Shown here piece after piece: positions 7,202 through 60,783 of a stretch of DNA of 60,783 nt. The stretch comes from Macrostomum lignano (lineage: Eukaryota). Both the position numbers and the translations under genes were made by a program. The notes under the pieces are model-generated. The model saw only the letters and a list, made by a program, of their open reading frames with translations, was not told the origin of the DNA and ran no database searches. The stretch is taken from positions 1-60,783 of the forward strand of contig NIVC01003180.1 in assembly GCA_002269645.1 (NCBI GenBank), read 5' to 3'. How positions within the stretch are numbered: the stretch's first letter is position 1; every line of letters starts with the position of its first letter.

Positions 7202-7255
7202 ATTTTTGGAACTTCGATGGGTGCTATTGTTTGCGCAGTGTTGCTCGGCTGTAGT

Positions 7256-16440: not shown

Positions 16441-16605
16441 TTCTGCTCATAACAGCATGGCTACCTCATGTCTTAGATATTAACTAATATATTAATGAAT
16501 AGAATCTCAATAAACTTATTTCAAAGTTCTACAAAATGAATATGGCATGTTATTGCCTTCATTACATTTTTAAAAAATATATATCCATGCTTATTTCAAA
16601 TAGGC

Positions 16606-36415: not shown

Positions 36416-36443
36416 GTAAGGAGCGACATTTGAGCTGCCATCT

Positions 36444-40044: not shown

Positions 40045-41265
40045 TCTATCTACCCTGATCTCCCTGTCTATCTACCCTAATCTCCCTGTCTATCTACCCT
40101 TAGATCTCCCTGTCTATCTACCCTGATTTCCCTGTCTATCTACCCTTAGATCTCCCTGTCTATCTACCCTAATCTCCCTGTCTATCTACCCTTAGATCTC
40201 CCAGTCTATCTACCCTGATCTCCCTGTCTATCTACCCTGATCTCCCTGTCTAACTACCCTAATCTCCCTGTCTATCTACCCTTAGATCTCCCTGTCTATC
40301 TACCCTGATCTCCCTGCCTATCTACCCTGATCTCCCTGTCTATCTACCCTAATCTCCCTGTCTATCTACCCTTAGATCTCCCTGTCTATCTAGCCTGATC
40401 TCCCAGTCTATCTACCCTGATCTCCCAGTCTATCTACCCTGATCTCCCTGTCTATCTACCCTAATCTCCCAGTCTATCTACCCTGATCTCCCTGTCTATC
40501 TACCCTGATCTCCCTGTCTATCTACCCTGATCTCCCTGTCTATCTACCCTTATATCTCCCAGTCTATCTACCCTAATCTCCCTGTCTATCTACCCTGATC
40601 TCCCTGTCTATCTACCCTGATCTCCCTGTCTATCTACCCTAATCTCCCAGTCTATCTACCCTGATCTCCCAGTCTATCTACCCTTAGATCTCCCAGTCTA
40701 TCTACCCTGATCTCCCAGTCTATCTACCCTGATCTCCCTGTCTATCTACCCTGATCTCCCTGTCTAACTACCCTAATCTCCCTGTCTATCTACCCTTAGA
40801 TCTCCCTGTCTATCTACCCTGATCTCCCAGTCTATCTACCCTGATCTCCCTGTCTATCTACCCTAATCTCCCAGTCTATCTACCCTGATCTCCCTGTCTA
40901 TCTACCCTGATCTCCCTGTCTATCTACCCTAATCTCCCAGTCTATCTACCCTGATCTCCCAGTCTATCTACCCTTATATCTCCCAGTCTATCTACCCTAA
41001 TCTCCCTGTCTATCTACCCTGATCTCCCTGTCTATCTACCCTGATCTCCCTGTCTATCTACCCTGATCTCCCTGTCTATCTACCCTGATCTCCCTGTCTA
41101 TCTACCCTTATATCTCCCAGTCTATCTAGCCTAATCTCCCTGTCTATCTACCCTGATCTCCCTGTCTATCTACCCTGATCTCCCTGTCTATCTACCCTGA
41201 TCTCCCTGTCTATCTACCCTGATCTCCCTGTCTATCTACCCTGATCTCCCTGTCTATCTACCCTA
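40045..41265. repeat. 22-bp minisatellite (TCTATCTACCCTGATCTCCCTG)
   Basis: About 55 units with 23-bp CCCTTAGA variants, between Caskin and the GST. Confidence 0.95.
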
Positions 41266-41926
41266 GTCTTGCCTGTCCCCGCTTGCAATCAATCTAGTCT
41301 GTCTACACGCTGAGCCGCACCCCCCCCTGTACAGTTGCCCAAGTCTGTGCTTGCAGCCAGACAGGCAGTTTCGAACTCGAATTACCCCAGTCACCCATTG
41401 GCAACTGCACCTGGCATGCGAAACAGTCTGTTTTTAAACACTTTAACTCTTGTCTTCTATTTGCTTCTCTGCCCACTAGAAGTTGTCACTGTTAAAAACT
41501 ACAATTATTAAATGTTTATTGCACTTGTTGAGCGCACAGATTCTCAGTTGATGTTTCAGAAACCCAGAAGCTGTTGTAAATACTCGATCGGTAGCAATCC
41601 TTTTTGTTTACCTAAAATGCGGAACAGTTTAACAAAATATAGCAATTTTTTGAAGCGCAGACTGCAACTGTCTCTGCCTGAATGCTTGCGGCCCTAATAA
41701 AGCTGTCCTGTTTATCCGTTTCATTCTAGAAGCAAAGACTTTACCTGGTGACTTTTTGGCTTTTTCAATTTCTCTTCTATTAATATTCTTTGACATTATT
41801 ATAGGTTTTGTTACAGTCCCACTTAAATTTACTCTACTGGCTACTGTCAGTAACAAGACTCGAATTTTGTACTCATTTTTCAGCTTGTTCAAGTTTAACG
41901 AAAAACCTCCACAGCCAAATTCGAAT

Positions 41927-41948
41927 ATGGTATATCACTACAAAACTG
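41927..41948 (+). CDS. Omega-like glutathione S-transferase, exon 1
   Basis: ATG GTA TAT CAC TAC AAA ACT G|GTAAAT. Joined in phase 1 it gives MVYHYKTGDARPELP, like the HLxxGxxxP N-terminus of invertebrate omega GSTs. Confidence 0.75.
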
Positions 41949-41992
41949 GTAAATCTTTTCTGTTAATTTGGGGTGTATTCTGGATGGAGAGG

Positions 41993-42718
41993 AGAGGCTG
42001 GTATCAGATGGCAACTCGACAGTATAAAATGATGGAGAGGAGAGGCTGGAAGCACATGGCAACTCGGATTATCATGCAAATGATGGAGAGAAGAGGCTGG
42101 AAGCTGATGGCAACTCGGCAGTACAAAGGATGGAGAGGAGAGGCTGGAAGCAGATGGCAACTCGGCAGTACAAGGGATGGAGCGGAGAGGCTGGAAGCAG
42201 ATGGCAACTCGGCTGCAAATGACGGAGAGGAGAGGCTGGAAGCAGATGGCAACTCGGCAGTACAAAGGATGGAGAGGAGAGGCTGGAAGCAGATGGCAAC
42301 TCGGCAGTACAAAGGATGGAGAGGAGAGGCTGGAAGCAGATGGCAACTCGGCAGTACAAGGGATGGAGCGGAGAGGCTAGAAGCAGATGGCAGCTCGGTA
42401 GCAAAGGATGGAGAGGAGAGGCTGGAAGCAGATGGCAGCTCGGTAGCAAAGGATGGAGCGGAGAGGCTAGAAGCAGATGGCAGCTCGGTAGCAAAGGATG
42501 GAGAGGAGAGGCTGGAAGCAGATGGCAGCTCGGTAGCAAAGGATGGAGAGGGGAGGCTGGAAGCAGATGGCAGCTCGGTAGCAAAGGATGGAGAGGGGAG
42601 GCTGGAAGCAGATGGCAGCTCGGTAGCAAAGGATGGAGAGGAGAGGCTGGAAGCAGATGGCAGCTCGGTAGCAAAGGATGGAGAGGAGAGGCTGGAAGCA
42701 GATGGCAACTCGGCAGCA
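41993..42718. repeat. 45-47 bp minisatellite (GGATGGAGAGGAGAGGCTGGAAGCAGATGGCA...), GST intron 1
   Basis: About 16 units, occupying most of the 907-bp intron. Confidence 0.92.
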
Positions 42719-42855
42719 AATATTTAGGGTTGGGCGAGGCTTATGCAGAGTAACAGAGCCAGTAGGCACGAATTAAAATGTGTCACCACTATTGTCTACT
42801 TTTAGTAGGCGAGCATGTTTTCCATTCTAAATTTTATTGTCTAAAAAATCTGCAG

Positions 42856-43538
42856 GCGACGCCCGCCCGGAGCTGCCAGCCGGCGAGGACGCCCTGGTGC
42901 TGTTCGAATCGAAATTCTGCCCGTTCTGCCAGCGGGTGGTCCTGGCGCTGAACCAGCGCGGCATTCCCTACCAGTCGGTGTACATCAACTTGTCCGCCAA
43001 GCCCGAATGGTTCGCCGAAATCAACCCAGGCGGCAAGGTGCCCGTGCTGATGATGGGGTCTCAGAGGCTGGTCGACTCCCTCATGATCTGCCGCTACGTT
43101 GACGAGCTGCCATCTGGCGGCGTCTCGGAGGCCCAGCTGTGCAGCAACGCGGATGCCGAGCGGCTGGCCCTGGCCTGGCTGGGCGAGTTCTTCCCGCCCA
43201 TGCACGACCTCATGACTCGGCCGGATGAGGCTCCGGAGAAGCTGGAGCAGGTGACGGCCGCCATGCGCCAGTTCGGCGAGCGCCTCGGCCCCAAGCCTTT
43301 CATTGGCGGCGCTCAGAGTGTCGGCCTGGCCGACCTGATCGCCTATCCGGCCGTTGCCATAGCAACCGGTCTGGCCAGCGTGCTTGACTGTCCGGAGCCG
43401 GCTGCCAGCGATACGGCTCTGGCCGGCTGGCTGTCTGAGATGCAGGCAGTGAAGGCGACGTCGGCGGCCACCAAGCCGGTCGAATGGGGCGCCTTTCTCA
43501 AGAGCCTGCGCGCCGGCAACCCGGACTACTCAGTGTGA
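42856..43538 (+). CDS. Omega-like glutathione S-transferase, exon 2
   Basis: TCTGCAG|GC. FCPFCQRVVLAL...INLSAKPEWF...NPGGKVPVL...DSLMICRYVDE and GLADLIAYP match the omega-class GST fold motifs. Confidence 0.9.
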
Positions 43539-43689
43539 GCTGGCCAGCCTCCCAGCGCTGGCTTCATCAGCACCTGAGTTCAGCTATTTTTCAAGACTGT
43601 ACTGTTATAGGATATGAAACATGAATTATTTTTTGTTACTTGGAGTTTAGTGGAGTTGTAGCCATGGAAACTAAAAGGTACAGTGTCTA

Positions 43690-44050
43690 GTCCTGTTGGT
43701 ACATCGGTAGTGCAGTATCCATGGTAACTAGTCCTGTTGCTATATGGGTAGTGCAGTATCCATGGTAACTAGCCCTGTTTCTATATGGGTAGTGCAGTAT
43801 CCATGGTAACTAGTCCTGTTGCTATATGGGTAGTGCAGTATCCATGGTAACTAGTCATGTTGCTATATGGGTAGTGCAGTATCCATGGTAACTAGCCCTG
43901 TTGCTATATGGGTAGTGCAGTATCCATGGTAACTAGCCCTGTTGCTATATGGGTAGTGCAGTAGCCATGGTAACTAGCCCTGTTGCTAGTTGGGTAGGGC
44001 AGTATCCATGGTAACTAGTCCTATTGCTGTAGTGAATGTCGTATCCATGG
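43690..44050. repeat. 41-bp minisatellite (CCATGGTAACTAGYCCTGTTGCTATATGGGTAGTGCAGTAT)
   Basis: About 8 units, decaying towards the 3' end. Confidence 0.9.
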
Positions 44051-45113
44051 TAACTAATCCGGTTGCTTTTTGGACTATTTCGTTTCCATAGTAACAAATC
44101 CTGTTGCTATACAGGGAGGCCTGTATTCATAGTGACTAGTTGCTATGGGGGGCATATCCAGAGTAAACTGGTTCTCTAGCTACATTATAACAGTTTTATA
44201 AATTTTTAGGAACGGGTCGTATCCATGGTAACAACTATTTTCAATTTACCATTTTCTTAGTTCTAAAAACAGAGATGCTTTGCAGATGGATGTTTTTGTC
44301 GGCAATCAAATTTATGCGGTAACTACTGACTGATAGATCAGTTTGTTGTTTGCTTTCCGTGTGTCTAAAAACATTAGATATTAATATAAATTGTTGTTTT
44401 CATTCACAATCGTATTATATTCCAGATTGCGCTGCAAATGAGGATTTTCTAGCATCCGGTTTTGCAGCTGCAAGCTTTTTTGTGGAATTTTTTCTTATTT
44501 TAATTGCAATTTTTCAGCTACTCACTACTAATTAGTAGTTTGCGCGCTTTCTAACAAAGCTTCGAAATTGTATTTCTAACTTTTTTTGTTGTTTATTAGT
44601 TAATTTAACTGTTATTCTATTTTCAGTAGGAAGCAGTGCAAATGAACATAAAATTATATTATTTATATTAAAAACGCTTCCGTCTGGCTTTGAGCAGTTA
44701 TAGTTGAGTAGATAAGTAGTGTGAGCCGCAGACCCCATTGATCATCTTATAAGACAATTAATTATATTGCCACCCGTTTACTGCGGTCCAGTTGTTTGTT
44801 GTCTGCTAATTGTAGTTCAAGCTGGCACTATGTCGAATAACAATATACTCGTATATTATATTTAATAATGGACTGGCTCTACTAAACAGTCAGAGGATAA
44901 TCATTGAATTGATTACGTAATCGTTTTATTTATGACGAAATTTCATTTCTACGAATAAGCTTTGATTGATAGATTTGACACGGATTGACACGGAGAGATT
45001 GCGCTTAGTTCGTATCGTATGTAGTTATTTTATGTGTGAATCGACACTTCGAACGCATGGAGTGCATGTTAGCTCTGCCAAATCATTGGCTATCGAGGCT
45101 TGCTTCAGAGATC

Positions 45114-46029
45114 CTAGCGTAGCGTCACGACCAGCTTGTCAGCAAGGCGGAACTCGTCTCAAGCGGCACGTCCGGCTGCGTGCTGTACACCAGCTGCGGC
45201 GGCCAGGTCATGTTGCCGCCGGCCCAGTCGACAGTGCAGCCGTCGGTTACGTCGAGAGCTACGAGTACCATGAGTACAAGATCACCCGGGCAGCCGCCGT
45301 AATAATAGTGAATTAACCAGCGACGCTGTTCACTAGCATCGCCAGCAATGCTGAAGAAGTGGAAGGTCCTGCTGGCGAGGTCGGTGACGGGCCAGCTGGC
45401 CTTCAGCCGGTCCCGAGAGAACCAGCTGGTCCTGTTCAGCTCGTTAGGCGACGCCGAGAGGTCGAAGGTGACCTTCAGGACGACAGAGGCGGCGACAGAG
45501 AGCTGGACGACGGCCTCCTTGAAGGTGAGCTTCGGCGCTACGGTGGGCAGCTGGTCGATGGCGCTGGCGCGGAACAGGTCGGGCAGGAGGCTGGCGGACC
45601 CGGGCGTACCCTGGACGGCGGAGCCGTTGCTGCGGCTCGGCGAGTCGACCAGATCGAACGACTTGACGCCGACGCCCGCTCGGATGCTCAGCGCGAGGAA
45701 GCCGCGCTCGGCGACGTCGCAGGACACAAGGCAGCGGCCTCCCGCCGAGGCCGAGACGGGGCAGGCGGCGAAGTCGCCACAGTCAGTCGGGCGACGCTCG
45801 CAGACACCGGAGTCGGCGTCCCACGTGACCGACTCGCCCGCGGTGGCTCCGTCGGCTGCGGCAGGTCCGGCCGGAAGCAGCCGCGGACGCCTTGGCTGGC
45901 GCTGGCGACTCGAGCCGGCGGCTCGCAGATCGATGCGAACTGCGACTCCGTGAAGCAGCCGGGCTGTCCGGCCCCGGCGCCCAGCAGCAGCGCCAGGCAC
46001 GTCAGGAGCGGCACCCTCGCATGCGCCAT
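45114..46029 (-). pseudogene. Secreted Cys-rich protein paralogue A, two single-base frameshifts (pseudogene or sequencing error)
   Basis: Signal peptide MAHARVPLLTCLALLLGAGAG. Paralogous to B and C throughout. 1-nt loss at about 45850 (GG vs GGG) and another at about 45150. The corrected C-terminus reads LADKLVVTLR* (TAG at 45114-45116). Confidence 0.75.
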
Positions 46030-46862
46030 GTCTGTCGTACAGTGGATTACGTTAGAATCAACTTAAAGCAGTTTTCCTCTCTACCCATTCTTCCGCATAT
46101 ATTACGAGCGTATACCTGCCAGCTTCCCCACCGGCCCTGTGCTGCTTGGCAGTTCGTAAACAGGCAGACTCATTGCTTGGTTAATAATTTAAGAAGGCTT
46201 GCAGGAAACGCACCTGCTGGGTACCAATTATAAAATTGCTTGGGGTAAGCACTGCGTTTCCATGGAAACATGCGGACGCACTTCTATGGCGTCTTGTTGC
46301 AAGAGTTAAGCTGTGGTTCAATTTGCATTGGAATTTTGAGGGAGAGCCGACTGAGCCCAAGCCTTGTATGCCTGAATACGGCTTCCACTTTAAGCAGCTC
46401 ATTGTGTGACTAGCCCGTTACCTGCAGGATATTTGACGACTGCAGGAAATTTTGAAAGCGTCACAAAAATCCTCTTTGCTTTTTGCAAAAATCTAAGTTA
46501 CCCAAGTTGACTCACCTTTAGTGTCAAACGCAATTGTTTGCTGATAACTGAGTAGTGAATTCGTTTCTCCTACCGAGGAAATTTGCGGAAGAATTGCGCT
46601 GGCCCCGTCACCATAGAAACGGCGTGTTTTGATAGCCTTTAGCGGAAATTTGAGTAAACAGACCGGCACTCTGAGCACCTTACTGAGCTGCTCAGCCCGG
46701 CTCAACACGTTTTACTTGCTAGAGAATCCCCCTCTGGCCAGAGTGTGCAGTTAACTGGGAAGTTAACTGGGTCAGGTATAAGAGATCAAACATGGCCGCT
46801 TTTTTGTTCCCTCGTTGTTTTCGCACTGCTGCTTTTCACCAGTTGAAAATTTGTCTGCAAAA

Positions 46863-47768
46863 ATGATTGCGCCACTCTTGACGTGCTTGGTGCTGCTGGT
46901 GGGCGCCGCTGCTGAGCCCGGCTGCTTCACGGAGTCGCAGTTCGCCTCGATCTGCGAGCCGCCGGTTCGAGTCGCCAGCGGCAGCCAAGGCGTCCGCGGC
47001 TGCTTCCGGCCAGACCTGCCGCAGCCGACGGGAGCCGCCGCGGGCGAGTCGGTCACGTGGGACGCCGACTCCGGTGTCTGCGAGCGTCGCCCGACCGACT
47101 GCGGCGACTTCGCCGCCTGCCCCGTCTCGGCCTCGGCAGGGGGCCGCTGCCTCGTGTCCTGCGACGTCGCCGAGCGCGGCTTCCTCGCGCTGAGCATCCG
47201 AGCGGGCGTCGGCGTCAAGTCGTTCGATCTGGTCGACTCGCCGAGCCGCAGCAACGGCTCCGCCGTCCAGGGCACACCCGGGTCCGCCAGCCTCCTGCCC
47301 GACCTGTTCCGCGCCAGCGCCATCGACCAGCTGCCCACCGTAGCGCCGAAGCTCACCTTCAAGGAGGCCGTCGTCCAGCTCTCTGTCGCCGACTCCGTCG
47401 TTGTGAAGGTCACCTTCGACCTCTCAGCGTCGCCTCACGAGCTAAACAGGACCAACTGGTTCTCTCGGGACCGGCTGAAGGCCAGCTGGCCCGTCACCGA
47501 CCTCGCCAGAAAGAGCTTTAACTACTTCAGCATTGGGGGTCATGTCAAGCGTAAACTTGAGCGCCGTTGGTTCATCAATTATGCTTACGGCGGCTGCAAC
47601 AGAGACCGCGGCCTCATGGTGGCTCTCGACATAACCGACGGCTGCGCTGCCTCCTGGGGCAACGGCAGTGTGACCTCGCCGCCGCGGCTGGTGTACAGCA
47701 CGCAGTCGGATGTGGCGTTTAAGAGCAGTTTCCAGCTTGCTGACAGGCTGGCCGTGACCCTACGCTGA
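46863..47768 (+). CDS. Secreted Cys-rich protein paralogue B, intronless, 301 aa, function unknown
   Basis: MIAPLLTCLVLLVGAAA signal peptide. Intact ORF with GC-rich codon usage like the other genes here. Confidence 0.85.
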   Translation: MIAPLLTCLVLLVGAAAEPGCFTESQFASICEPPVRVASGSQGVRGCFRPDLPQPTGAAAGESVTWDADSGVCERRPTDCGDFAACPVSASAGGRCLVSCDVAERGFLALSIRAGVGVKSFDLVDSPSRSNGSAVQGTPGSASLLPDLFRASAIDQLPTVAPKLTFKEAVVQLSVADSVVVKVTFDLSASPHELNRTNWFSRDRLKASWPVTDLARKSFNYFSIGGHVKRKLERRWFINYAYGGCNRDRGLMVALDITDGCAASWGNGSVTSPPRLVYSTQSDVAFKSSFQLADRLAVTLR

Positions 47769-48127
47769 GCTGCCTGAAACCAGTGTGAGCTGGCAGTGCA
47801 GAGGGTGGCTGCTGCTGGCAGTGTTATCCATTTTAGACCGAATGTTTTGCAATCCGAAACTTGCGCACAATGCACAGTAATGCTCTTTCTGTCTTAAATT
47901 CTGAGCCCGGCTGCAATTTAGTCTAAAGAATTCCTTGCTATCCAGTCAGTTTATTATCAGTAGAACGAAGTTTCATCTTTGAGGAAATATATTTCAGATG
48001 TGGTGACTGTGGTCGGCTTGGAAGCTCGGCCTCAGTACTATAAATTTGACGCAAATGAGTTTTATTTAGACTTTGGGACACGATGAGTGAAGCCCGCAAA
48101 TCCATAGGCGTTGGGACGCGATGGGTG

Positions 48128-48610
48128 AAGCCTGGAGGAGATCCAGAGGCGTTGGGACGTGCAGAGGGAAGCCTGGAGAGATCCAGAGGCGTTGGGACGT
48201 GCAGAGGGAAGCCTGGAGGAGATCCAGAGGCGTTGGGACGTGCAGAGGGAAGCCTGGAGGAGATCCAGAGGCGTTGGGACGTGCAGAGGGAAGCCTGGAG
48301 GAGATCCAGAGGCGTTGGGACGTGCACAGGGAAGCCTGGAGAGATCCAGAGGCGTTGGGACGTGCACAGGGAAGCCTGAAGAGATCCAGAGGCGTTGGGA
48401 CGTGCACAGGGAAGCCTGGAGAGATCCAGATAGGCGTTGGGACGTGCAGAGGGAAGCCTGGAGAGATCCAGAGGCGTTGCGACGTGCAGAGGGAAGCCTG
48501 GAGGAGATCCAGAGGCGTTGCGACGTGCAGAGGGAAGCCTGGAGGAGATCCAGAGGCGTTGGGACGTGCAGAGGGAAGCCTGGAGGAGATCCAGAGGCGT
48601 TGCGACGTGC
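48128..48610. repeat. 40/41-bp minisatellite (GCCTGGAGGAGATCCAGAGGCGTTGGGACGTGCAGAGGGAA)
   Basis: About 12 units between paralogues B and C. Confidence 0.93.
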
Positions 48611-50065
48611 AATGAATCTTCTATGGTTCAGTGCAGATAGTTAGTAGCACAACATCTATAATTGCCGCTCTTCTACTTCAGGTTCGATACCTTATACTGC
48701 TATGGTAACCAGTCTTTGCAAATATCAATAAATCCGTAAAAACTTAAATTTAACTATCAATGTTTTGGTATCCTAAATGTCAGTCACGTATGCAAAGATT
48801 TTAAGGAATTGTCAAGGCCAAGAGACAATGTCCAGTGCGAATTAAATGGCTGGCAAATATGGCCAGCTTTGTCTGAATTTGCATTATCGGTAATAGGGGG
48901 GGATTATCAGTTGCGTAGCGGTAAATTGACTTCTCACCTTCTGTCCTGCCGCATTGCAAATGAAGTTCGAATATGTGCTAGACTTCTTTTACTCGTGTTT
49001 TATTAGAGGCAGGATGGTGTGTGCACACTGGCGCACATTAAGCGACATTGTCGCACAACCTGCGAGAGGCATTACTGCACATTCCGCCGACTCACCTGAG
49101 CAGGCACACTCCAAGGGTCCAAGCGCGCGGATACGTACTCAGTCATACGCACAGGCACACACACTCACACAGGAGTGTACAGCGGCCCTAACTTTCTTTG
49201 TCGTTAGACATGTACACTTCACTTTGCCTTGGGAGTTGACCTTCAAGTGCGTTAATTGCACGAGCAGAGTCAAGCCGAGATTCAAATTTAGCCTCAAATT
49301 AATGTGACTGCACTTGGAATCGAACCTGGGCCGTTGGCACATCAGAACACCGCACTGGACTACTAGGCTGCCACAACGACAACAACGGATTTTGCACCAA
49401 TTGTCTTCTTTTACAACGGGTAAAAGTGTTCGGTCTAGAAACTCCACATGGAATGCATAAATGTACATTTATTTTGAAAACGAATTCTGCCTCTTAGTCG
49501 CAGAGTCCAGCGCGCCTCTCCAATACTTTGGCTGGCAATTTCTTGCAGTCGAAACAGTTTAAAGTCCTCCACTTGTTAAGAAAAGTTTCTGCCTGAAACA
49601 GTTGCCTCTTCCTCCAGCCAGTCTTCCTGAGTAGCCTCATCATTAATTAATTAATCCGCAGCCGCTGGTCCCCAGGAGGGAACAATAATGCGTGCTTAGT
49701 AGCTAACATTGCTGCTTCAAATTCTTTTTAACGTAGCCTGAGTAAGCAGGTTTTCTATGCCTAATCGGACGCAAACTTTTCCACTCTTGCAATTTGAAGA
49801 GTACAGCAACTCAGCTTGCAAGCCCCTCACTTCGTTGTCAAAACAGCCGTCTTGCGGATCTCCGGAGTCCTGCAAAGATGGCCGTGCCCAATAATTGATG
49901 AGTCTGCAGGGCGAGACCAAAATCCCCCAGCCAATCCGCAAAAAGTTTTGCTGGATCCGGCAGCAAGCGAAATAAATGCTCTAAAACCAGCAAGCGTTAG
50001 AGCCGCTCAAAACTGGAAGAGAAAAATCGACTGGCCAAACCACTGACATAGACTTGCACTGAACA

Positions 50066-50989
50066 ATGAAGTCGTCCGGTGCGACACTCCTGACGTGCCT
50101 GGCGCTGCTGCTGGCCGCCGGGGCCGCCGCCGGACAGCTCGGCTGCTTCACGGAGTCGCAGTTCGCATCGATCTGCGAGCCGCCGGTTCGAGTCGCCAGC
50201 GGCAGCCAAGGCGTCCGCGGCTGCTTCCGGCCGGACCTGCCGCAGCCGACGGGAGCCGCCGCGGGCGAGTCGGTCACGTGGGACGCCGCCGCCGGTGTCT
50301 GCGAGCGTCGCCCGACCGACTGCGGCGACTTCGCCGCCTGCCCCGTCTCGGCCTCGGCAGGGGGCCGCTGCCTCGTGTCCTGCGACATCGCCGAGCGCGG
50401 CTTCCTCGCGCTGAGCATCCGAGCGGGCGTCGGCGTCAAGTCGTTCGATCTGGTCGACTCGCCGAGCCGCAGCAACGGCTCCGCCGTCCAGGGCACACCC
50501 GGGTCCGCCAGCCTCCTGCCCGACCTGTTCCGCGCCAGCGCCATCGACCAGCTGCCCACCGTAGCGCCGAAGCTCACCTTCAAGGAGGCCGTCGTCCAGC
50601 TCTCTGTCGCCGACTCCGTCGTCGTGAAGGTCACCTTCGACCTCTCAGCGTCGCCTCACGAGCTAAACAGGACCAACTGGTTCTCTCGGGACCGGCTGAA
50701 GGCCAGCTGGCCCGTCACCGACCTTGCCAGCAGGACCTTCAACTACTTCAGCATCGAAGGTCATTCTGATGGCATACTCGAGCGTCGCTGGTTCATCAAT
50801 TATGCTTACGGCGGCTGCTCGGGCGATCTCGGCCTCATGGTAGCTCTCGACGTAACCGACGGCTGCGCTGTCGACTGGGCCGGCGGCAACATGACCTCGC
50901 CGCCGCGGCTATTGTACACCACCTCACATAACGTCACTTGGAAGCTGAGCGTACAAAGTGCGGATAAACTCGCTGTCATTCTGCGCTGA
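50066..50989 (+). CDS. Secreted Cys-rich protein paralogue C, intronless, 307 aa, function unknown
   Basis: MKSSGATLLTCLALLLAAGAAAG signal peptide. Core nearly identical to B. Confidence 0.85.
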   Translation: MKSSGATLLTCLALLLAAGAAAGQLGCFTESQFASICEPPVRVASGSQGVRGCFRPDLPQPTGAAAGESVTWDAAAGVCERRPTDCGDFAACPVSASAGGRCLVSCDIAERGFLALSIRAGVGVKSFDLVDSPSRSNGSAVQGTPGSASLLPDLFRASAIDQLPTVAPKLTFKEAVVQLSVADSVVVKVTFDLSASPHELNRTNWFSRDRLKASWPVTDLASRTFNYFSIEGHSDGILERRWFINYAYGGCSGDLGLMVALDVTDGCAVDWAGGNMTSPPRLLYTTSHNVTWKLSVQSADKLAVILR

Positions 50990-52541
50990 TGGAGTTCTGT
51001 GATGCAGCATTGGATTTGAAAAATTGTCACTGTTGTCAGTTTTTCCTTAGCAACTCAGTACCCAAATGTAGCTTTGTGATTGGAGTCCGTCAAGTATCCT
51101 TCACGGGGACATCTGTTCTATCAATTATTAAGTGGCCAGAATTTTATTTGCAACCGAAGCTGTGTTGAACGTGCCTGCTGTTAAACGTTTCCGTATAATT
51201 CTCTCAATTAATTGCATCTGACCCTTATCACTGTGTTATTTTTAGCACTGGCAGGTTTGCTTGTCGGTGTCTTCAAATTAATGCTTATACAATCTCTTTT
51301 TGTATTTCACGCTTATTGCTTGCTTGTTGTAAAAGATCCTAGCTCATTAGCGAGTCAAGTCGAATGTTTTGTAGCCAGTACTTAAAGCAACTATTTGTCC
51401 TAACTGCATGCACATGTAGCTACATGTGTTAAGTACATATATAATTATTGACTCTAAATCTATAGCACGCGAAACTCAGCTAAGTTACACTCCGAGCTCC
51501 TTAATAATAGCTTCTATAGCTCCTCTCGGCTCTCTTATATACAATTGCATAGAAAGATCGAGAGACCAACGCAAATATACAGTACTACATGTACGAGATT
51601 GCTATCCACTTCAGTCTTGATGTTTGTCCTTGTTCATGTTGCTATACTATACCTCATTCCATTGTAGCTCGCAATTAAAAACTACTTGAGTTAGTCCTTG
51701 GCTTGCACACACACGTACGGAATTACCATGCTCGATTCCTGCCGACAGTCCGTGTCATAAGTACGCGTTTTCATTGTAGCTACTGAGATAGTGGGGGGGC
51801 GGGGATGTACCCGTATGGACAACTAAAGTATAAGACACTGCACTTGGGAATCGCTGGATTTTCACTGCATGAATGCCGGGTGTCGTCTTAAATTCATTAC
51901 CCAATACAGTAAATTTTTCTGTTTAGTTTTTTAGCCCTAAAATGGTATATATCTAATTATTTATGAACTTCCGAATTACAAACATTGGTTTACAGACCAA
52001 CCAGCCAATGTAGCTCGTATGAATCGCAACGGAAAATCGTAGTTATGCCACTCACATTTAGTATTTTAGAATTATATTATATTTTATATTACTGTATTCT
52101 TCATTTTATATTATTATATTATTCCGATCTAGTATCTTCTAATATAGTATTATTTTAGTATATAGGAAGATTGCGGCTCTGACGATAGCTTCCGTCGAAA
52201 TTCTATTTTAAATTGTTTGTATATTTTATTTAAACACCATTTACAGTTACCAAGAAAATTTTAGCTGAAAGCATGGGCTTTACGTTTTAATCATTCAAAA
52301 TACTTAAATATACACTTGTCTCTTTGTTCTAGCTTACCTTTTTCGTCTCAAAATTTTTCACAGAAACTAGGTTGTGATTTTTAACTTAGATTTTCTTAGA
52401 AACAAATGACTTGATCATTTTACATTGAAGCTTGTTTAATTTGCCAAGCTCTGTATTTAATTATAAAATTGACAAAAAGTCTGTAGTCCGAAAAATAAAT
52501 ATAAATAATTTTTAACTAATATTTGTTTTCAAGTCGTATTC

Positions 52542-52638
52542 ATGAATTTTTATCGTCGCTTTATCACGGAATTAGTTCCTGATACTCTACGAAATGTTCC
52601 TGTGCCTGATAGCTTCTTTGGGATTTTTAAACTTTCAG
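52542..52638 (+). CDS. CISD2: CDGSH iron-sulfur protein 2 (Miner1/NAF-1), exon 1
   Basis: MNFYRRFITELVPDTLRNVPVPDSFFGIFKLS resembles the CISD2 N-terminus (LPxYLxxLPVPES.xG..xL). Donor TCAG|GTACGT, phase 1, fits exon 2. Confidence 0.85.
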
Positions 52639-53611
52639 GTACGTCAATTATTTAATATTTTTAAGTGATATTCTTTTTAACAAGACAAAAACGATGAATA
52701 AAAAGTAGCATAAATAGCCAACCAACGTTTGCTGTTAATTTTTCAATATAATGAAAGCAAATTTTGTTGACACTTGTTTCCAGCATTCAATTTATCTAAC
52801 TAGGCCTAACCCTAAGATAAATCTGGTTATTTTGTTGCACCCGACCCGACCTCCTGAATTTATAGTAACTTAATGAAAAATGTTATGAAATAGCAGTTGG
52901 CCCGAAATTGGCCTTATATAGGCTGAATGCCATTATTGTATAAAATTTTCTATTGCCATATTAGTAGTAAATGTATTATATTTCATCAATATAATTGATG
53001 ATCTTAAATTATAATAATCCACATTCTGGATCATGTAGTATACCTGTATATGCCAGAAAATTTGGGCATGAATTGGCCTTGCATGCCTAAAGTTAAATAT
53101 GCACAGTTGGCTTATATGACTTAAGAAAAAAGTATATGTGCATACCTAGCATGCAATCCATGGAATAACATGGAAAAGTTAGTGTTAAGTGGATTAAAGA
53201 TTTAAATATTCATATTTAAGCATAAATTTCTAACTTTTTGGCTTTTAAGCTCATTAATAATGTATTAAAACAAATGTTTATACATATTGATTTTCTGCTA
53301 TAAATTGTATAAAACAAGAAAGATAAAAATCAACCAAATTATAAACCAAAAAGATCATTTATTGTCGCAACACAGGCCTAGATTTGAGAAAGTGAGCTTG
53401 TACTCAATTTTTGCATGCATTTCTAACTCTTCAATTTGTTTTTTGGGTTGCACCTAGCATAGTTTGGACTTTGGTTAACAATTACTTAATAATTGAATAA
53501 GTCACACTAGAAACTTCTATCATAGTTTATATACAGTGTAGCTAAATAATTAGGAGATATGAGGAGTAGCCTTATCCTTTTAGCATGAGCTTTAAAAGGA
53601 TTACAAAGATA

Positions 53612-53900
53612 ACCTACAAATACCAGAATAACTAAATAAGCCACTCAGAGCACATCTGTATACAAGCTACTTTCAGTTCAGTAGTGTAAGTTAAAATGAA
53701 GCATTTTATGTATTTTTAAAGATAAGGTTCATTTACTGGCTTTTACTTCCAAGTTTTAACACTCAAACTTTATGCAGAACCTCTATCCTCACCCTATCAC
53801 CCAATTTTTATTACCCTCCTCAGTTGTTCTAGTTCTAGCCTACTAAGCGTACTAAGTATATGCTTGAGTGGCCTATCTAGTCATTTTAGTATCTGTGGGT
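53612..53900. mobile_element. Second, internally deleted and inverted copy of the 15274-15725 MITE, in the CISD2 intron
   Basis: 53640-53815 aligns by eye to the reverse complement of 15520-15700 (GCCACTCAG...TACTTTCAGTTCAGTAG...CAGAACCTCTA...CACCCAATTTTTATT). Ends GAGTGGCCTATCTAGT...TCTGTGG. Confidence 0.8.
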
Positions 53901-54237
53901 AACCAATCAAATTTGTTAATAAAATATAGGCTTACCCCTTTATCCCTAAGAGCTGCTCCCTTTCTTATCATCTTCATTGCATTATTATATAATTCTATTC
54001 ATTCTATTTCTAGTTACCATGCATACAAAGGTTTATGAATGTTCACTTATATTTCAATAAGTAGTATAAGTTAAAAACAGTTTTCATTTTATCTTTGGAG
54101 TTGCTTCAAAATAGACCCATGTATGATAGAATTTTTTGGTTTTTGAATAATTTTCTACAATTGCAATCTACTTTTAACAGGCATATGACATTTCACTGAA
54201 ATTAACTAATTGATATTCTTGCTTATTGATTTCACAG

Positions 54238-54560
54238 CATCTGAGCTTGCTAAGCTGACGCTGTTCACTGGTGCATCTGGTTTCCTAGCCTACTCTGTGT
54301 ACACCACCTGTCGCTACAAATTCTCCAGCAAGTCTGCTGGCAGCAGTGCCAGCAGCCACAGCCAGCCAGTGAACTGGAGTGTGCAGAAGGACAAAGACAA
54401 GGTTGTGAACACGGTGGACATTGAAGAGATCTCTGGCGACAAAGTGTGCATGTGCAGGTGCTGGCGGTCCAAGCAGTTTCCCTACTGCGATGGGACGCAC
54501 AATCAGCACAACAAGGACACTGGAGACAATGTCGGCCCGCTCATTGTGAAGAAGGGCTAA
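54238..54560 (+). CDS. CISD2: CISD2 exon 2 (TM helix and CDGSH-type 2Fe-2S domain)
   Basis: TTCACAG|[16 protein letters not shown]...[30 protein letters not shown]. Confidence 0.95.
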
Positions 54561-55045
54561 CTGAGCGCCACTGCACTGCTCAAAGTAGATGGAATGGACA
54601 CGCTGTTGAGAACTTGAAAGTTTATAAATGTCATACAGAATGACAACAAACTTTCAAGCATTTTCTAAGAAAAGTGTCCTCATCTTTGCTTGGAGTTCCA
54701 CCTAAAGGGACTTGCCAGTCCATTGTGCACCTCCATCAAACATCTCTCTGTACTGCTGCAATCCCCATTAATGACTCTCTGATTCAAAATACCTGACTAC
54801 ACCTGTGCAGATGTGTTCACACCTCTGAACTGAAATCATTGACGCCCAACTAGCAGCAACGCCTAGCTAACGTTGATTATTGGTTTGTTCCACATCTGTT
54901 CTTATAATGTTATTTAGTTTGTTTGGCTAGCGAAAAATATAAATTGCTCTCAAATACGAGTTGACCTGGTGGTCATTTACGACTCAATTTTCGATTGCAA
55001 ATAAGTTCTTAGTTGCATTTGGTTAACTTCACGTTTTACTTAGAT

Positions 55046-55650
55046 CACGGAGGACATAGCACGACGCAGGGCGCTTGCCTGGGGCGCATTCCGCACCGTG
55101 CGGACTGTCCTGCAGAGCCCCGCCCTGCCGGATCGGCTGAGAGGGCGGCTGTTCCAGGCCGTCATTGAAACCGTCCTCCTTTACAATGCTGAAACGTGGA
55201 CACTGACCGGCCCGCAGGAGCGGCAACTCGACGCCGTTCACGCTGGACTCCTGAGAGCCGCCTTCAGTGTCCACTACTCGCCGACCGCCACCACCAACAC
55301 CAGCAATGACGAGTTATACCGACGGGCCCAGCTCTCCCGACCCAGCCCTGCGCATCCGGCGCCTACAGCTGGCCAGCCAGGTCATCCGGGCAGAGCAGTA
55401 CTGCCCTGAGCCGCTTCAAGACGTGCTGCTGCTATCCATTCAAGGGCCGCGGCGGCTTGGTCAGGCGAGAAGTCCGCGTTTCGTCGACCTGCTTTTAAGA
55501 GCCGCTGAAATCTCCAACCCCCGCGGACTCGCTATTCTGCGCAAATCTGCGCTTGCGCGCGCCTTTTGACAACCCAACCCAACTTGGCTTGCCTGGGCAA
55601 GTGGGCAAGCCAAGTTGCGTTGCTATAGTTTGTTGTTGTTGTTGTTGTTG
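55046..55650 (+). mobile_element. 5'-truncated non-LTR retrotransposon (RTE-like), end of ORF plus 3' UTR and (GTT)n tail
   Basis: EDIARRRALAWGAF...RLFQAVIETVLLYNAETWTLT is the post-RT region of RTE-type LINEs. Frameshift near 55345, stop at 55569, (GTT)n tail. TTAGAT on both flanks (55040-55045, 55651-55656) is a candidate TSD. Confidence 0.85.
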
Positions 55651-56312
55651 TTAGATAAAAATAAGTTATAAATAATTCTGCCCATCCCGCGGACTCCTTG
55701 AGCAAATGCAATCGCGCCAATACTCACGCAGACGCTCACAAAGGGTGTGCAGCGGCCCTTTGAATTTCTAATCGTCAGATATGTACACTCAATCTGTGCC
55801 TTCGTGGGTTGGCCCTCGTTGTTGTGTGAATCGCACGACCACTCGCGGCTAATTTTGGGTGCCCAAGCCCCAAAGACGACGGACAAGCATCCAAGACGAT
55901 CTGCAAAGGGCTTATTTTGCATTTTTTAATAGTTCACCTCGATTTCAACCGTGTCAGCGAGTTCTTACTCCAGTCTGCATCGAATCTAATTAACTTCGAA
56001 GACCTTCTTTGACACCTGTAGGATAGAAATGACTGAGCTACTTCAGAACGCTGTTACACATGTACGAGCGTAGCCTAAATTAAACGGAATTCATGTCTAC
56101 TGTAAACTCTTACATTATTTACTCTGTGCAGGCGTCTATTTGAAGTCGGCATTCGCACATTTTTGGATTAAGCAACGGAAATAGAAAAGCGGTTTCACAG
56201 AAGAGCATCTTGTTCTTTAAAACATTAAAAAGTCATTGTTTTAAACTTTCGCCGAGATATTTAAAGGACACCAGTGAGCACAGGTTAAGCTACATGTATG
56301 CAGCCATCGGGC

Positions 56313-56588
56313 TCATGAGAACACCAGCATCCGGGTGGCCGACAGGAGGTCCGTAACGGTCTTGAGGTACTGGAAGTCCACCTCGGCCACCCTGTCCTTG
56401 GCCTCTTGGCTGCTGAACTCTTGGAACGAATTGTAGAAATCCGCGTGATAACCAACCGCCTCGTCCGGCTCGTCGCTGAACTCCTCGGCGAACTCCTTGA
56501 TCTTGAGCCGGCGGACGTGTCTCCGGGTGACGGTGAATAGGTAATAGTCATCTTCGTTAACCGAGCAGTCCTCCATGTGCTCGCAGGC
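56313..56588 (-). CDS. DNAI7: Dynein axonemal intermediate chain 7 (CASC1/CFAP94), exon 2
   Basis: CCCACAG|GCC, phase 0. Ends DLLSATRMLVFS*, like the CASC1 C-terminus. Confidence 0.88.
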   Translation of the reverse strand, partial: ACEHMEDCSVNEDDYYLFTVTRRHVRRLKIKEFAEEFSDEPDEAVGYHADFYNSFQEFSSQEAKDRVAEVDFQYLKTVTDLLSATRMLVFS

Positions 56589-56825
56589 CTGTGGGACGTC
56601 AATTTTCGATGTTTTCGATGCTAAACTAATAAGATGACGAGGTTTTCAACGAATCAAAGGTTGCTCCCGCCGTTCACTCTTTACTGTGGCTTATAAAAAT
56701 CCTAATAAGTCAAATGGGTGATCAAGTCCTATGACGTTTGCGCATAGCCAATTTCATTACCTGCATGTAGAGAACTCTCAGGGTGCGGTATCTATAGGGT
56801 TTGACCCAATTTGAAAATAATTCAC

Positions 56826-58853: not shown

Positions 58854-60783
58854 GCTGCTGAGCTGCTGTGGGGTCTTTTATATATACGATGGGCTCTACT
58901 CTTCACAACTCTTCACAAATTGCGTTTTCTGCTGCTTCTGGCCGGAAGCCGGATGCCAGGGGACAAGGCTCTGGCGGGAACAAGGAGCAACTTCAACAAT
59001 GCTTTCTGCAGGCACGCAGCACAATGGGCCTGTCTAACCGATTGCTGAGTGCTGGCTTCTAGGCTAAAGAATGCAAATTTGAGAAGTGCTGTAGAAAAAA
59101 TTCTATCGTTGCTTCAGTTTTGAATTGGCGGGCCAGGCTCGCGCTGTTGTCAGGGGCAACGTTGGACGGGGCAGCCGCGTACACTGTGGGGCGGTGGGGC
59201 AGGCCGTACAGACCCGCTCTCTGCCCCAGGTGTATCTTCTGTCCTCCCTCACTCTGCTCTCTTTCTCTCTCTCTTCTCAGGCCAGTGAACGGAGCAGGCT
59301 TAGAATGTTAGTAGTGTGTCGCATGAAGCCAAGCCTTGTCACCAGGTCGTGCTTTTTACCTCTATTCTTGTGTAGAATGAAGAATAGCAGCTGTTCATTG
59401 CTGACCGTACTTACTCAATAAACGTTCGCGCATCGTCCTGCTCATATCATCGAGCTATCGACGAATCAAATTTTCCATAGTTGGATTAGATTCAGCTCTA
59501 TAAAGTGAGAAAAGAGAATCGATGTTTATAAATAATAAGCCATTTCCAATCAGACTACTACTAGTAATCTAATAAGACGAGCATACCGCAGAAAAAGAAG
59601 CAGATTTTGTAAGCCTTTTGTAGGCTTCAGGATCCGCAGACTTTTAACATTTAATTACATCGAACTTTATTGAATTGTCTCTTGAATTCTCTTGAGTTTT
59701 ACCTGTGTCACCTCTCAGTACTGCAACAAAAACCACTTGGGAGTGCGCGCATGGGGTGTATATATTGGGTGTACACATTGAAACCAATTGCAAAGGGTCG
59801 AGCCACGGATAACTGAAGTAGAAGGGCTACTAAACTCGATTTTCTTAGAAATGAGCTGGGCGGTAAGGAAAGCATACCTGTCGTATCGCTATCGCTAGTG
59901 CATTTTGCATACTCTATAGGAAACGAATTAACGCTGAATGGGGGTTTTGCCATTGAGCCCGCCGAGATTTGCCTGCAATGCTTAGTAACTCTTAAAAAGA
60001 TTTATCCGACCAAAACGTTTTGATGGTAACTGGGGTACATCTGTGAGCTATTAGTTCATGCAAATGCCATGTTGCTCTGTCCCTAATTCTCTTTATTAAG
60101 ACTTACTAAGCACTGGGAGGCAACGCAGACAAAATCTGCCGCGTGGCTAAATACGCTGCAGGAAAAAAGCATTGTGGACAAAGTTTCATCGGGAAAAGCT
60201 CGGTGAGCAATTCGTCTGCGGGCAATTCTCATGGAACCCCCAATATACGTCCGATATATTCAACAATGTCCAATATAGTATAACACAAGTTCGTTACACG
60301 AGTTCGCTCCGCAGTCTATTATTGCATCTGCAGTTATAAAAAGATTGATTTGATCGTAAACAAGACAAAAATATGTACAAGAAGGAATACGCTACTTATT
60401 TAGTAAGTACGTATAAAAGCCTCCGAAACTATAAATAGATTGTATACATTATTACCCGGTGCAAAAGTCGAACAAATAGAACAAATAACATTTTGAAATA
60501 GATTTACATCAGTAGATTGAGTTGAAAATAGCGAATGCAAGTCAATGTTGACCCAGCATAGCCATATCCAATCCACGTATAGCTATAGGCTTCTCCATCT
60601 TTTAGGGTCATGTCAGTGGTAAGTTTTAAACCCATTGTGCTGCTGCTTCACCTTTAGCTTCCACAATGAGCTTCAGCCCACATCCTTTTTACCGATGCGC
60701 TGCTTATTTAATGTCATTCATTCTCCGTTCACCGGCCCGGGCGACACGGAGGCTGTTCGACGGGCCAGCGCAGACACTGACAG

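What the first reader, a model, noticed from the sequence alone, without database searches (positions are those of the whole stretch)
45114..50989. Cluster of three intronless secreted proteins with a near-invariant core and a hypervariable C-terminal domain
All three have a signal peptide, a Cys-rich segment (GCFTESQFASICEPP...GCF...GVCERRPTDCGDFAACP...CLVSCD) and a C-terminal domain (WFSRDRL..SWPVTDL...FSIxG...RRWxIxYxYGGC). About 210 residues are almost identical even at synonymous sites. The last ~90 differ by many replacements and indels, concentrated in apparent loops: GDASEQ / GHVKRKLE / GHSDGILE and CPGDL / CNRDR / CSGDL, including charge reversals. A constant scaffold with a variable tip is the pattern of recognition proteins (immune, allorecognition, reproductive, toxin). 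I cannot assign a named family, so this is the best candidate for an undescribed system in the window.
Basis: partly seen in the sequence, partly recalled or inferred. Interest (0 to 1): 0.8.

Follow-up and report, generated by a model that had tools for sequence, protein, structure and literature searches.

The report
Flatworm fibrinogen-like secreted gene trio
Three neighbouring genes of the flatworm Macrostomum lignano (one of them frameshifted) encode secreted proteins of a large unnamed offshoot of the fibrinogen-related lectin superfamily; their identical middle and different ends are best explained by gene conversion between old copies, not by a hypervariable recognition tip.

Summary
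Three single-exon paralogues lie at 45114-46029 (-), 46863-47768 (+) and 50066-50989 (+). A central stretch of about 590 bp is 1-3.4% different; the signal peptide and the last 82-85 codons are about 26% different.

- Copy A carries two 1-bp deletions, so it is not an intact protein as assembled.
- The "core/tail" border lies inside one globular domain.
- Variable residues are not enriched in loops.
- In the tail dS is 0.39-0.85 and dN/dS 0.29-0.70. The tail is old and under net purifying selection. The middle was homogenised, and its GC3 is 0.91 against 0.70-0.73 in the tail.

The window is the whole contig NIVC01003180.1 of Macrostomum lignano. None of the three genes appears among the genes on record for this contig.

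The proteins belong to a family of at least 701 sequence clusters. It occurs in aquatic invertebrates and some bacteria, and every member looked up is uncharacterised. Better-preserved members start with the fibrinogen "YCDxxxxGGGW" A-subdomain (PF00147, PF01410, NF040941). The following module of about 170 residues has no Pfam model and no close solved structure.

Function is inferred: a secreted, lectin-like binding protein. Moderate interest.

The parts
45114..46029 (-). Copy A: paralogue with signal-peptide start at 46029 and ancestral stop TAG at 45116-45114. It is disrupted by two 1-bp deletions and is either a probable pseudogene or an assembly error.
   Evidence: the ATG ORF 46029-45688 gives 113 aa; the rest reads in another frame (ORF 45125-46000); the conserved end ADKLVVTLR* is in a third frame.
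45849..45850 (-). Frameshift 1 in copy A: a G-run of 2 where B and C have 3 (ACGGGAGCC to ACGGAGCC).
   Evidence: DNA alignment, columns 360-370; sequence.
45151..45152 (-). Frameshift 2 in copy A (approximate site, in a diverged stretch): AGTTCC against AGTTTCC in B.
46863..47768 (+). Copy B: intact single-exon CDS of 301 aa. Signal peptide, then a Macrostomum-specific Cys-containing stretch of about 55 aa, then the FReD-like domain.
   Evidence: identical in contig NIVC01002357.1.
50066..50989 (+). Copy C: intact single-exon CDS of 307 aa with the same architecture.
   Evidence: identical in NIVC01002357.1; AlphaFold models.
45335..45989 (-). Homogenised (converted) tract in copy A.
   Evidence: inverted-repeat arms I1-I4, 91-95% complementary; maximum chi-square segment at codons 24-221.
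46891..47544 (+). Homogenised tract in copy B (maximum chi-square estimate against C: about 46920-47501).
   Evidence: dS 0.02 against C; GC3 0.91.
50120..50767 (+). Homogenised tract in copy C.
47545..47768 (+). Old, unconverted 3' third of B. It is the last third of the globular domain, not a separate domain.
   Evidence: dS 0.39-0.85 and dN/dS 0.29-0.70; all family-invariant residues kept.
50768..50989 (+). Old, unconverted 3' third of C.
45114..45334 (-). Old 3' third of A. It is mosaic: closer to C over alignment codons 255-285.
   Evidence: the A-C low-divergence segment extends to codon 286.
50312..50986 (+). FReD-superfamily-like domain of C (residues about 83-307). It comprises a degenerate A-subdomain remnant, PTDCGDFAACPVSASAGGRCLVSCDIAERGFLALSIRAGVG, followed by the uncharacterised module of about 170-195 aa.
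   Evidence: alignment A6; profile against PDB; pLDDT above 90 for residues 111-307.
46030..46862 (.). 833-bp spacer between the head-to-head copies A and B. It is not conserved with the upstream region of C.
   Evidence: GC 0.46.

Best explanation
The locus is a small cluster of three old paralogues in Macrostomum lignano: A and B head-to-head, and C 2.3 kb downstream of B. A is disrupted as assembled.

Each gene encodes a secreted protein with three parts:
- a signal peptide;
- a lineage-specific stretch of about 55 aa that contains cysteines;
- one globular domain of about 225 aa.

That domain belongs to a large uncharacterised branch of the fibrinogen-related (FReD/COLFI/intelectin) superfamily. 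It consists of a degenerate 'YCDxxxxGGGW' A-subdomain followed by a conserved module of about 170 aa (NWFS..RL..S.W.DL ... NYFSI.G ... RRFFIN..YGGC..D.GW ... C.WE ... AD..avfvk).

The striking pattern is a product of concerted evolution. Gene conversion between the inverted and direct repeats has repeatedly overwritten a central tract of about 590-650 bp. Conversion may also have raised GC3 there. The signal-peptide codons and the last 82-85 codons keep the older divergence. The 3' third is under net purifying selection that preserves every family-invariant residue, and family-variable surface positions drift at near-neutral rates.

What is shown and what is inferred:
- Shown: homology, the divergence pattern, family membership and the fold prediction.
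- Inferred: gene conversion as the mechanism, from the dS contrast, the sharp breakpoints, the mosaic A-C similarity and the GC3 difference.
- Inferred by analogy only: function as a secreted ligand- or glycan-binding (lectin-like) protein whose paralogues may differ in specificity through the 3' third.
For: - Source and integrity: the Casc1 ORF is 100% identical to M. lignano BOX15_Mlig033530g1, and the window equals contig NIVC01003180.1. B and C are exact in a second contig.
- Divergence pattern: core dS 0.02-0.10 against tail dS 0.39-0.85 and signal-peptide dS 0.28-0.54; tail dN/dS 0.29-0.70. Breakpoints lie at codons 24-25 and 218-221, with 0 of 200 shuffles reaching the observed value. 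The A-C tract is mosaic. GC3 is 0.91 against 0.70-0.73. Substitutions show no base-specific bias, and third positions dominate the B-C tail differences.
- Selection within the tail: omega is 0.04-0.20 at family-conserved sites and 0.6-1.5 at family-variable sites. Variable residues fall on family-variable columns (p = 2.6e-5).
- Family: 701 representatives at E <= 1e-3, in flatworm, molluscs, echinoderms, hemichordate, amphioxus, corals and bacteria, all uncharacterised.
- Link to FReD: canonical members hit PF00147 and PF01410 above threshold, but only over their first 50-75 positions, and hit NF040941. The family profile hits tenascin, fibrinogen, FIBCD1, MFAP4, ficolin-3, tachylectin-5A, angiopoietin, intelectin/XEEL and collagen C-propeptide at E from 4e-7 to 1e-2 through profile positions 2-60. 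Foldseek top hits are FReDs. UniProt labels a distant M. lignano paralogue 'Fibrinogen C-terminal domain-containing'.
Against: - The window proteins themselves give no Pfam or NCBIfam hit. Their A-subdomain is degenerate (CLVSCDIAERGF, no GGGW), and AlphaFold leaves it at low confidence.
- The FReD link covers only the first ~50-75 residues. Fold matches are weak (E 0.2-0.5, TM at most 0.38), so the C-terminal module may not be a remodelled FReD at all.
- Gene conversion is inferred from three sequences without an outgroup. Selection against homogenising the 3' third would give the same picture.
- Omega for A-B at family-variable sites is 1.49.
- No expression or binding data exist, and the genes are not among those on record for this contig.
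Confidence: 0.7

Rival explanations
1. One reading: these are recognition proteins (immune, allorecognition or reproductive). Their constant scaffold carries a C-terminal tip kept diverse by diversifying selection, and conversion tracts are excluded from the tip because homogenised variants are selected against.
For: - The superfamily is rich in recognition lectins.
- Tail differences fall on family-variable positions, one of them indel-prone.
- Omega at those sites is 0.6-1.5.
- The conversion breakpoint recurs near codon 220 in all pairs.
Against: - Overall tail dN/dS is 0.29-0.70 with high dS.
- The signal peptide is equally diverged.
- Variable residues are not enriched in loops.
- One of only three copies is disrupted.
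- B and C are identical in the second contig.
- The only omega above 1 involves the disrupted copy A, where relaxed constraint is the simpler reading.
Confidence: 0.17
2. A recent whole-gene duplication was followed by locally raised mutation (a hypermutation-like process) in the 3' third and the signal peptide.
For: Both dS and dN are raised in the tail, as a mutational hotspot would produce.
Against: - Substitutions show no base- or motif-specific spectrum.
- The flanks outside the CDS do not align at all, which argues for old duplicates.
- Family-conserved sites in the tail have omega 0.04-0.20 with dS of 0.5-0.9, typical of long purifying selection.
- B and C tails are identical between the two contigs.
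Confidence: 0.03
3. Assembly or polishing artefact: paralogous reads were mixed, so the near-identity of the cores (and/or the frameshifts of A) is not biological.
For: The assembly is redundant: two other contigs repeat parts of this one at 99.8-99.9%. The first frameshift in A lies in a clear homopolymer run; the second is at a short T-run in a diverged stretch.
Against: - A separately predicted M. lignano gene model, UniProt A0A1I8IVZ4 (P0002), holds a fourth, B-like copy with the same near-identical core and a distinct tail.
- A differs from B and C at 3.4% of core sites, mostly synonymous, so the cores are not collapsed.
- The breakpoints are sharp and the reading frames of B and C are clean.
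Confidence: 0.05

Closest known systems
Fibrinogen-related domain proteins (FReD, Pfam PF00147: ficolins, tachylectin-5A, FIBCD1, tenascin FBG, angiopoietins, snail FREPs)
   Same: - Secreted proteins.
- The family's better-preserved members start with the FReD A-subdomain (C...GVYxIxP...FxVYCDMxTxGGGWT). They hit PF00147 above threshold over profile positions 4-54, and PDB FReDs at E down to 4e-7.
- FReDs are the top Foldseek hits.
- Like FREPs and ficolins, the genes sit in multi-copy clusters.
   Different: - No match to the B and P subdomains: positions 55-221 of PF00147, the Ca2+ site and the NCA...GGWW...C motif.
- TM-scores are at most 0.38.
- The window proteins have lost GGGW and the YCDM tyrosine.
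- There is no IgSF, collagen or coiled-coil partner region.
- There is no evidence of FREP-type somatic diversification.
Intelectins / X-type lectins (XEEL, ITLN1)
   Same: The same design principle: a FReD-like N-terminal segment (...CDMTxGGGWTLV...) followed by a divergent remainder. The family profile hits XEEL at 1.2e-5 and ITLN1 at about 6e-3 over positions 2-60.
   Different: No similarity beyond about 60 residues. Intelectin's Ca2+/exocyclic-diol site is not detectable. Intelectins are described mainly in chordates (abstracts listed), whereas this family is found in aquatic invertebrates and bacteria.
Fibrillar collagen C-propeptide (COLFI, PF01410)
   Same: Some members match COLFI positions ~20-97 above the gathering score (P0132 at 2.7e-8; P0079 at 2.8e-23 over two modules).
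   Different: Only the N-terminal third matches. There is no collagen triple helix upstream. COLFI structures were not among the 50 best Foldseek hits.
NCBIfam NF040941, 'fibrinogen-like YCDxxxxGGGW domain' (bacterial)
   Same: Bacterial and some coral members of the family hit this 46-position model at 40-127 bits against a cut-off of 30.
   Different: The model covers only the 46-aa N-terminal motif. The conserved ~170-aa module that defines this family is unmodelled. The M. lignano proteins do not hit it.
Concerted evolution by partial gene conversion in tandem or inverted paralogues (general phenomenon)
   Same: A sharp-edged tract with near-zero dS inside older paralogues; inverted and direct repeat geometry; higher GC3 in the tract.
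   Different: Nothing unusual. The tract simply ends inside the domain.

Membership tests
Uncharacterised 'NWFS...NYFSI.G...RRFFIN..YGGC..D.GW...C.WE' family (this report; 701 cluster representatives) | Significant match to the C-terminal module, and retention of its invariant R, C, C and near-invariant F, W, F, S, G, D, W. | tested here: met
   B and C keep all of them (R240, C251, C267 and others in C numbering). Relatives match at E down to 1e-93. A keeps them too once its frame is restored.
FReD (Pfam PF00147 / fibrinogen C-terminal domain) | A-subdomain motif C...(F/V)YCDM...GGGWT, with the first disulfide. | tested here: inconclusive
   Present and significant in canonical family members. 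In B and C only a degenerate remnant, DCGDF...CLVSCD(I/V)AERGF, aligns there, at low pLDDT.
FReD (Pfam PF00147 / fibrinogen C-terminal domain) | A full-length match to the HMM that includes the B and P subdomains. | tested here: not met
   No PF00147 hit for A, B or C at E <= 1. In relatives the match stops at profile position about 54 of 221. The PDB profile matches cover only query positions 2-60. The C-terminal module alone finds no FReD.
FReD (Pfam PF00147 / fibrinogen C-terminal domain) | Fold similarity to solved FReDs. | tested here: inconclusive
   FReDs fill the top of both Foldseek lists, but at E 0.19-1, probability at most 0.25 and TM 0.2-0.38.
FReD lectins (ficolin, tachylectin, FIBCD1) | The Ca2+ site and the acetyl-group or glycan pocket in the P subdomain; demonstrated ligand binding. 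| not testable with these tools
   No alignable P subdomain. Binding needs recombinant protein and glycan arrays.
NCBIfam NF040941 GGGWT_bact | A score of at least 30 bits against the 46-position model. | tested here: not met
   Copy C gives no hit at E <= 0.1. Relatives P0079, P0097, P0095, P0135, P0146, P0132 and P0170 score 40-127 bits.
Intelectin (X-type lectin) | Similarity beyond the FReD-like N-terminus, including the intelectin-specific Ca2+/diol site. | tested here: not met
   Matches to XEEL and ITLN1 end at profile position 60.
   Tail dN/dS is 0.29-0.70. There is no loop enrichment. Only the A-B comparison at family-variable sites reaches 1.49. Three sequences are too few for site models.

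The most novel reading that the evidence does not exclude
The ~170-aa module that follows the FReD A-subdomain is a new ligand-binding fold. It would define an unrecognised lectin class shared by aquatic invertebrates (flatworms, molluscs, echinoderms, hemichordates, amphioxus, corals) and myxobacteria-like bacteria. In M. lignano the paralogues would keep different binding specificities because selection stops gene conversion from entering the 3' third.
Probability: 0.2. Interest if true: 0.6.

Novelty: new variant of a known kind. Interest (0 to 1): 0.33.

Why it matters

What remains useful:
1. A widespread extracellular domain family has no Pfam model, no solved or closely similar structure, and no characterised member found here. 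It has at least 701 clusters at 50% identity across six or more animal groups and in bacteria. It can now be anchored to the fibrinogen/COLFI/intelectin superfamily through its A-subdomain.
2. Two intact M. lignano genes are absent from the genes on record for this contig.
3. M. lignano is amenable to RNAi and in situ hybridisation, which makes it a practical place to learn what this family does.

Tried and rejected
- Pfam on A, B and C: nothing except a chance DUF5490 match at E 0.26.
- Pfam on 45 domain sequences: only scattered single chance hits.
- PF25538 (DUF7922): a partial match to positions 94-125 in one amphioxus protein only, and none in ten other members. I did not take it as the family's model.
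- The word-indexed protein search found only one Lymnaea protein with the whole protein, and two proteins with the domain profile. The exhaustive HMMER search was needed.
- PDB sequence search with the C-terminal module alone: only Homer EVH1 at E 0.3, rejected as chance.
- Exact-product look-ups for B, for C, for the TTG-extended B and for the Casc1 ORF found nothing. There is therefore no transcript evidence.
- The tblastn scan found no further family copy elsewhere in the window.
- Literature searches by accession, by motif name and by 'Macrostomum lignano' plus 'fibrinogen' found no description of the family.
- ApeC/apextrin came to mind because its taxon range is similar, but no Pfam hit supports it.
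- I could not check copy A in a second contig, because L001 stops at window position 46312.

Full report
**Source.** The 691-aa ORF at 56778-58853 (-) is 100% identical to the Macrostomum lignano protein BOX15_Mlig033530g1, a Casc1/DNAI7 homologue. The contigs that encode that protein show that the window is the whole 60,783-bp contig NIVC01003180.1 of assembly GCA_002269645.1. Other ORFs fit a bilaterian genome: a 5-HT1-like GPCR, a GST and a SAM-domain protein. In the gene table returned for this contig, which covers window 46313-60783, no gene is called over B or C. Copy A lies outside the stretch shown. No protein identical to B or C is on record.

**The observation.** Three homologous single-exon ORFs exist:
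- A: 45114-46029 (-)
- B: 46863-47768 (+), 301 aa
- C: 50066-50989 (+), 307 aa

A and B are head-to-head, 833 bp apart. C follows B after 2.3 kb that contains a 41-bp minisatellite. DNA similarity begins in the signal-peptide codons and ends at the stop codon, and the flanks do not align.

B and C are intact. Together with their spacer they are base-for-base identical in a second contig, NIVC01002357.1.

Copy A is not intact as assembled. A G-run at 45849-45850 has two G where B and C have three, which puts the signal peptide and first 60 residues out of frame with the rest. A second frame change near 45151-45152 separates ...DVPLETS from the conserved end ...ADKLVVTLR*. The first change lies in a clear homopolymer run and the second at a short T-run in a diverged stretch, so long-read indel errors are possible. 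No second contig covers A.

**The pattern, measured.** On a codon alignment, with N placeholders restoring A's frame for analysis only:

| Region | dS | dN or dN/dS |
|---|---|---|
| Central ~178 codons | 0.02 (B-C), 0.07-0.10 (A-B, A-C) | dN 0.008-0.023 |
| Last 82-85 codons | 0.39-0.85 | dN 0.23-0.28; dN/dS 0.29 (B-C), 0.40 (A-C), 0.70 (A-B) |
| Signal-peptide codons | 0.28-0.54 | not applicable |

A two-breakpoint maximum chi-square scan places the low-divergence segment at alignment codons 25-218 for B-C: 6 of 582 nt differ, against 86 of 321 outside. For A-B it is 24-221: 20 of 591 against 78 of 304. None of 200 shuffles reached the observed statistic. A-C share extra similarity in the signal peptide and over codons 255-285, so the tracts are mosaic.

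GC3 is 0.91 in the tract and 0.70-0.73 in the tail. That is what GC-biased gene conversion would produce, although it is not proof. Tail substitutions use all base pairs, and third positions dominate for B-C (35 of 72). This argues against any base-specific hypermutation.

**What the protein is.** Pfam finds nothing in A, B or C. The word-indexed search found one Lymnaea protein. An exhaustive HMMER search with a profile of B, C and the Lymnaea domain found 701 cluster representatives at E <= 1e-3, of which 275 are at <= 1e-10. Nearly all match profile positions about 177-307.

Only one hit covers the N-terminal 110 residues. It is a misfused M. lignano gene model, UniProt A0A1I8IVZ4 (P0002), that holds a fourth, B-like copy about 83% identical. 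The Cys-containing stretch of about 55 aa after the signal peptide is therefore lineage-specific.

Named members of the family come from M. lignano (single-domain secreted proteins and true tandem-domain proteins) and from these groups:
- gastropods: Lymnaea, Physella, Biomphalaria, Batillaria
- bivalves: Argopecten, Solemya
- echinoderms: Anneissia, Asterias
- a hemichordate: Ptychodera
- amphioxus
- corals: Acropora, Oculina
- a Myxococcota bacterium and metagenomic bacteria

All are 'uncharacterized' or 'hypothetical'. In other animals the domain is combined with Sushi, EGF, PAN, TSP1, fn3 and ZP domains, that is, with extracellular architectures.

It runs from about residue 83 (or 112) of C to the end.

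**Link to a known superfamily.** Eleven of 130 extracted units begin with a textbook FReD A-subdomain, SC.d...G...sGVYxIDP.G....FxVYCDM.T.GGGWTxV(F/Y)KLS.G. The evidence is as follows:
- These members hit PF00147 (profile positions 4-54 of 221) and PF01410/COLFI (positions ~20-97 of 233), several of them above the gathering scores. They also hit NCBIfam NF040941, 'fibrinogen-like YCDxxxxGGGW domain', at 40-127 bits.
- A family profile (A6) hits solved structures only through profile positions 2-60: tenascin FBG at 3.9e-7, XEEL at 1.2e-5, fibrinogen beta at 3e-5, FIBCD1, MFAP4, ficolin-3, tachylectin-5A, angiopoietin-2, intelectin-1 and collagen C-propeptides.
- UniProt labels one distant M. 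lignano paralogue 'Fibrinogen C-terminal domain-containing protein'.
- In B and C the corresponding segment is degenerate: PTDCGDFAACPVSASAGGRCLVSCD(V/I)AERGFLALSIRAGVG.

The C-terminal module alone has no Pfam model and no PDB sequence match.

AlphaFold2 models residues 111-307 of C as one compact alpha/beta unit with pLDDT mostly above 90; the N-terminal 110 residues score below 50. Foldseek against the PDB puts fibrinogen, ficolins, ANGPTL3, FGL1 and tenascin at the top in both runs. The scores are weak, however: E 0.19-1 and TM at most 0.38.

I conclude that the family is a divergent branch of the FReD/COLFI/intelectin superfamily. As in intelectins, only the A-subdomain is still recognisable. 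Whether the rest is a remodelled B+P region or a different module is unresolved.

**The variable third in that light.** The identity border, near codon 220, lies inside the globular domain. Of 82 aligned tail residues, 42 vary among A, B and C. They fall on columns that also vary across the family: mean conservation is 0.37 against 0.61 for the invariant residues (Mann-Whitney p = 2.6e-5). They are not enriched in predicted loops: 17 coil, 18 strand and 7 helix, against 18, 18 and 4.

Every family-invariant or near-invariant residue is retained. Splitting the tail gives omega 0.04-0.20 at family-conserved sites and 0.59, 0.78 and 1.49 (B-C, A-C, A-B) at family-variable sites. The only value above 1 involves the disrupted copy A.

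The first sits in a loop whose length varies family-wide.

This is what purifying selection on a fold, plus near-neutral drift on its surface, looks like. With three sequences, a few positively selected sites cannot be excluded.

**Mechanism, with degrees of support.**
- Shown: three paralogues, one disrupted; one FReD-superfamily-like globular domain; a sharp-edged central tract of near-identity; old, constrained ends.
- Inferred with good support: repeated gene conversion between the inverted (A/B, A/C) and direct (B/C) repeats.
- Inferred by analogy only: the products are secreted and bind an extracellular ligand, most likely a glycan. The grounds are typical signal peptides, no C-terminal anchor, a family-conserved final strand, and extracellular partner domains in relatives. 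The paralogues may differ in specificity.

I put about 0.7 on the evolutionary and structural account and about 0.35 on lectin-like function.

**Rivals.**
- Diversifying selection on a recognition tip (0.17). It fits the superfamily and the recurring breakpoint. It is contradicted by the dN/dS values, the dS values, the diverged signal peptide and the lack of loop enrichment.
- Local hypermutation (0.03). It is contradicted by the substitution spectrum, the unalignable flanks and the identical tails in two contigs.
- Assembly artefact (0.05). It is contradicted by the separate gene model with the same architecture and by A's mostly synonymous core differences. A's frameshifts may still be sequencing errors.

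**Verdict.** The locus itself is ordinary concerted evolution. The lasting point of interest is a large uncharacterised extracellular domain family that can now be tied to the fibrinogen-related superfamily, and two intact flatworm genes not on record for this contig. Novelty: new variant of a known kind. Interest: about 0.33.

Noticed in passing
window 46313-60783; loci L001 and L003: Two other contigs of the same assembly repeat the right end of this contig: NIVC01002357.1 at 99.8% over 14.5 kb and NIVC01002358.1 at 99.86% over 5.6 kb. This is either assembly redundancy or a very recent duplication. B, C and their spacer are exact copies in the first contig.
   Followed up: partly
window 40045-41264, 41982-42720, 43687-44111, 48100-48611: Four minisatellites with units of 22, 45, 41 and 41 bp and 10-54 copies. 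The last lies between B and C. Long ORFs that run through them (for example 47938-48612 and 41756-42727) are repeat artefacts.
   Followed up: no
window 45348-45953 (+), 46772-47413 (-), 49981-50634 (-): ORFs of more than 200 aa lie antisense to the homogenised core of each copy. They are most simply a by-product of GC3 = 0.91 and not genes.
   Followed up: partly
window 6038-7363 (-): A single-ORF rhodopsin-type GPCR. It is closest to 5-HT1A, 5-HT7 and 5-HT1B receptors among solved structures (E 2e-64).
   Followed up: partly
window 56778-58853 (-): A Casc1/DNAI7 (axonemal dynein IC97) gene. The annotated product is 767 aa against the 691-aa ORF, so the annotated CDS extends beyond this ORF at one end.
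   Followed up: partly
window 42837-43538 (+), 35680-36447 (+), about 54240-54560: A GST-like ORF, a SAM-domain ORF, and a called zf-CDGSH gene.
   Followed up: no
window 10001-18000 and 52001-54000: AT-rich blocks (GC 0.30-0.34) within a contig that is otherwise about 50-55% GC.
   Followed up: no
proteins P0017, P0044, P0063 (not in the window): The same domain family occurs in proteins of about 2,200 aa with two to three family modules. P0017 is from a Myxococcota bacterium; P0044 and P0063 come from metagenome or unnamed contigs, and theirs start with the canonical YCDxxxxGGGW motif. This raises the question of transfer between animals and bacteria.
   Followed up: partly
proteins P0003, P0152, P0005 and others (M. 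lignano, not in the window): UniProt names for M. lignano relatives, such as 'Peptidase S9', 'MULTIHEME_CYTC', 'DUF4091', 'HZS_alpha' and 'Protein-tyrosine-phosphatase', find no support in the Pfam scans run here (P0002, P0003) and look like automatic labels. P0002 is a fused gene model. Others are genuine tandem arrays of this domain with a period of about 205 aa.
   Followed up: partly
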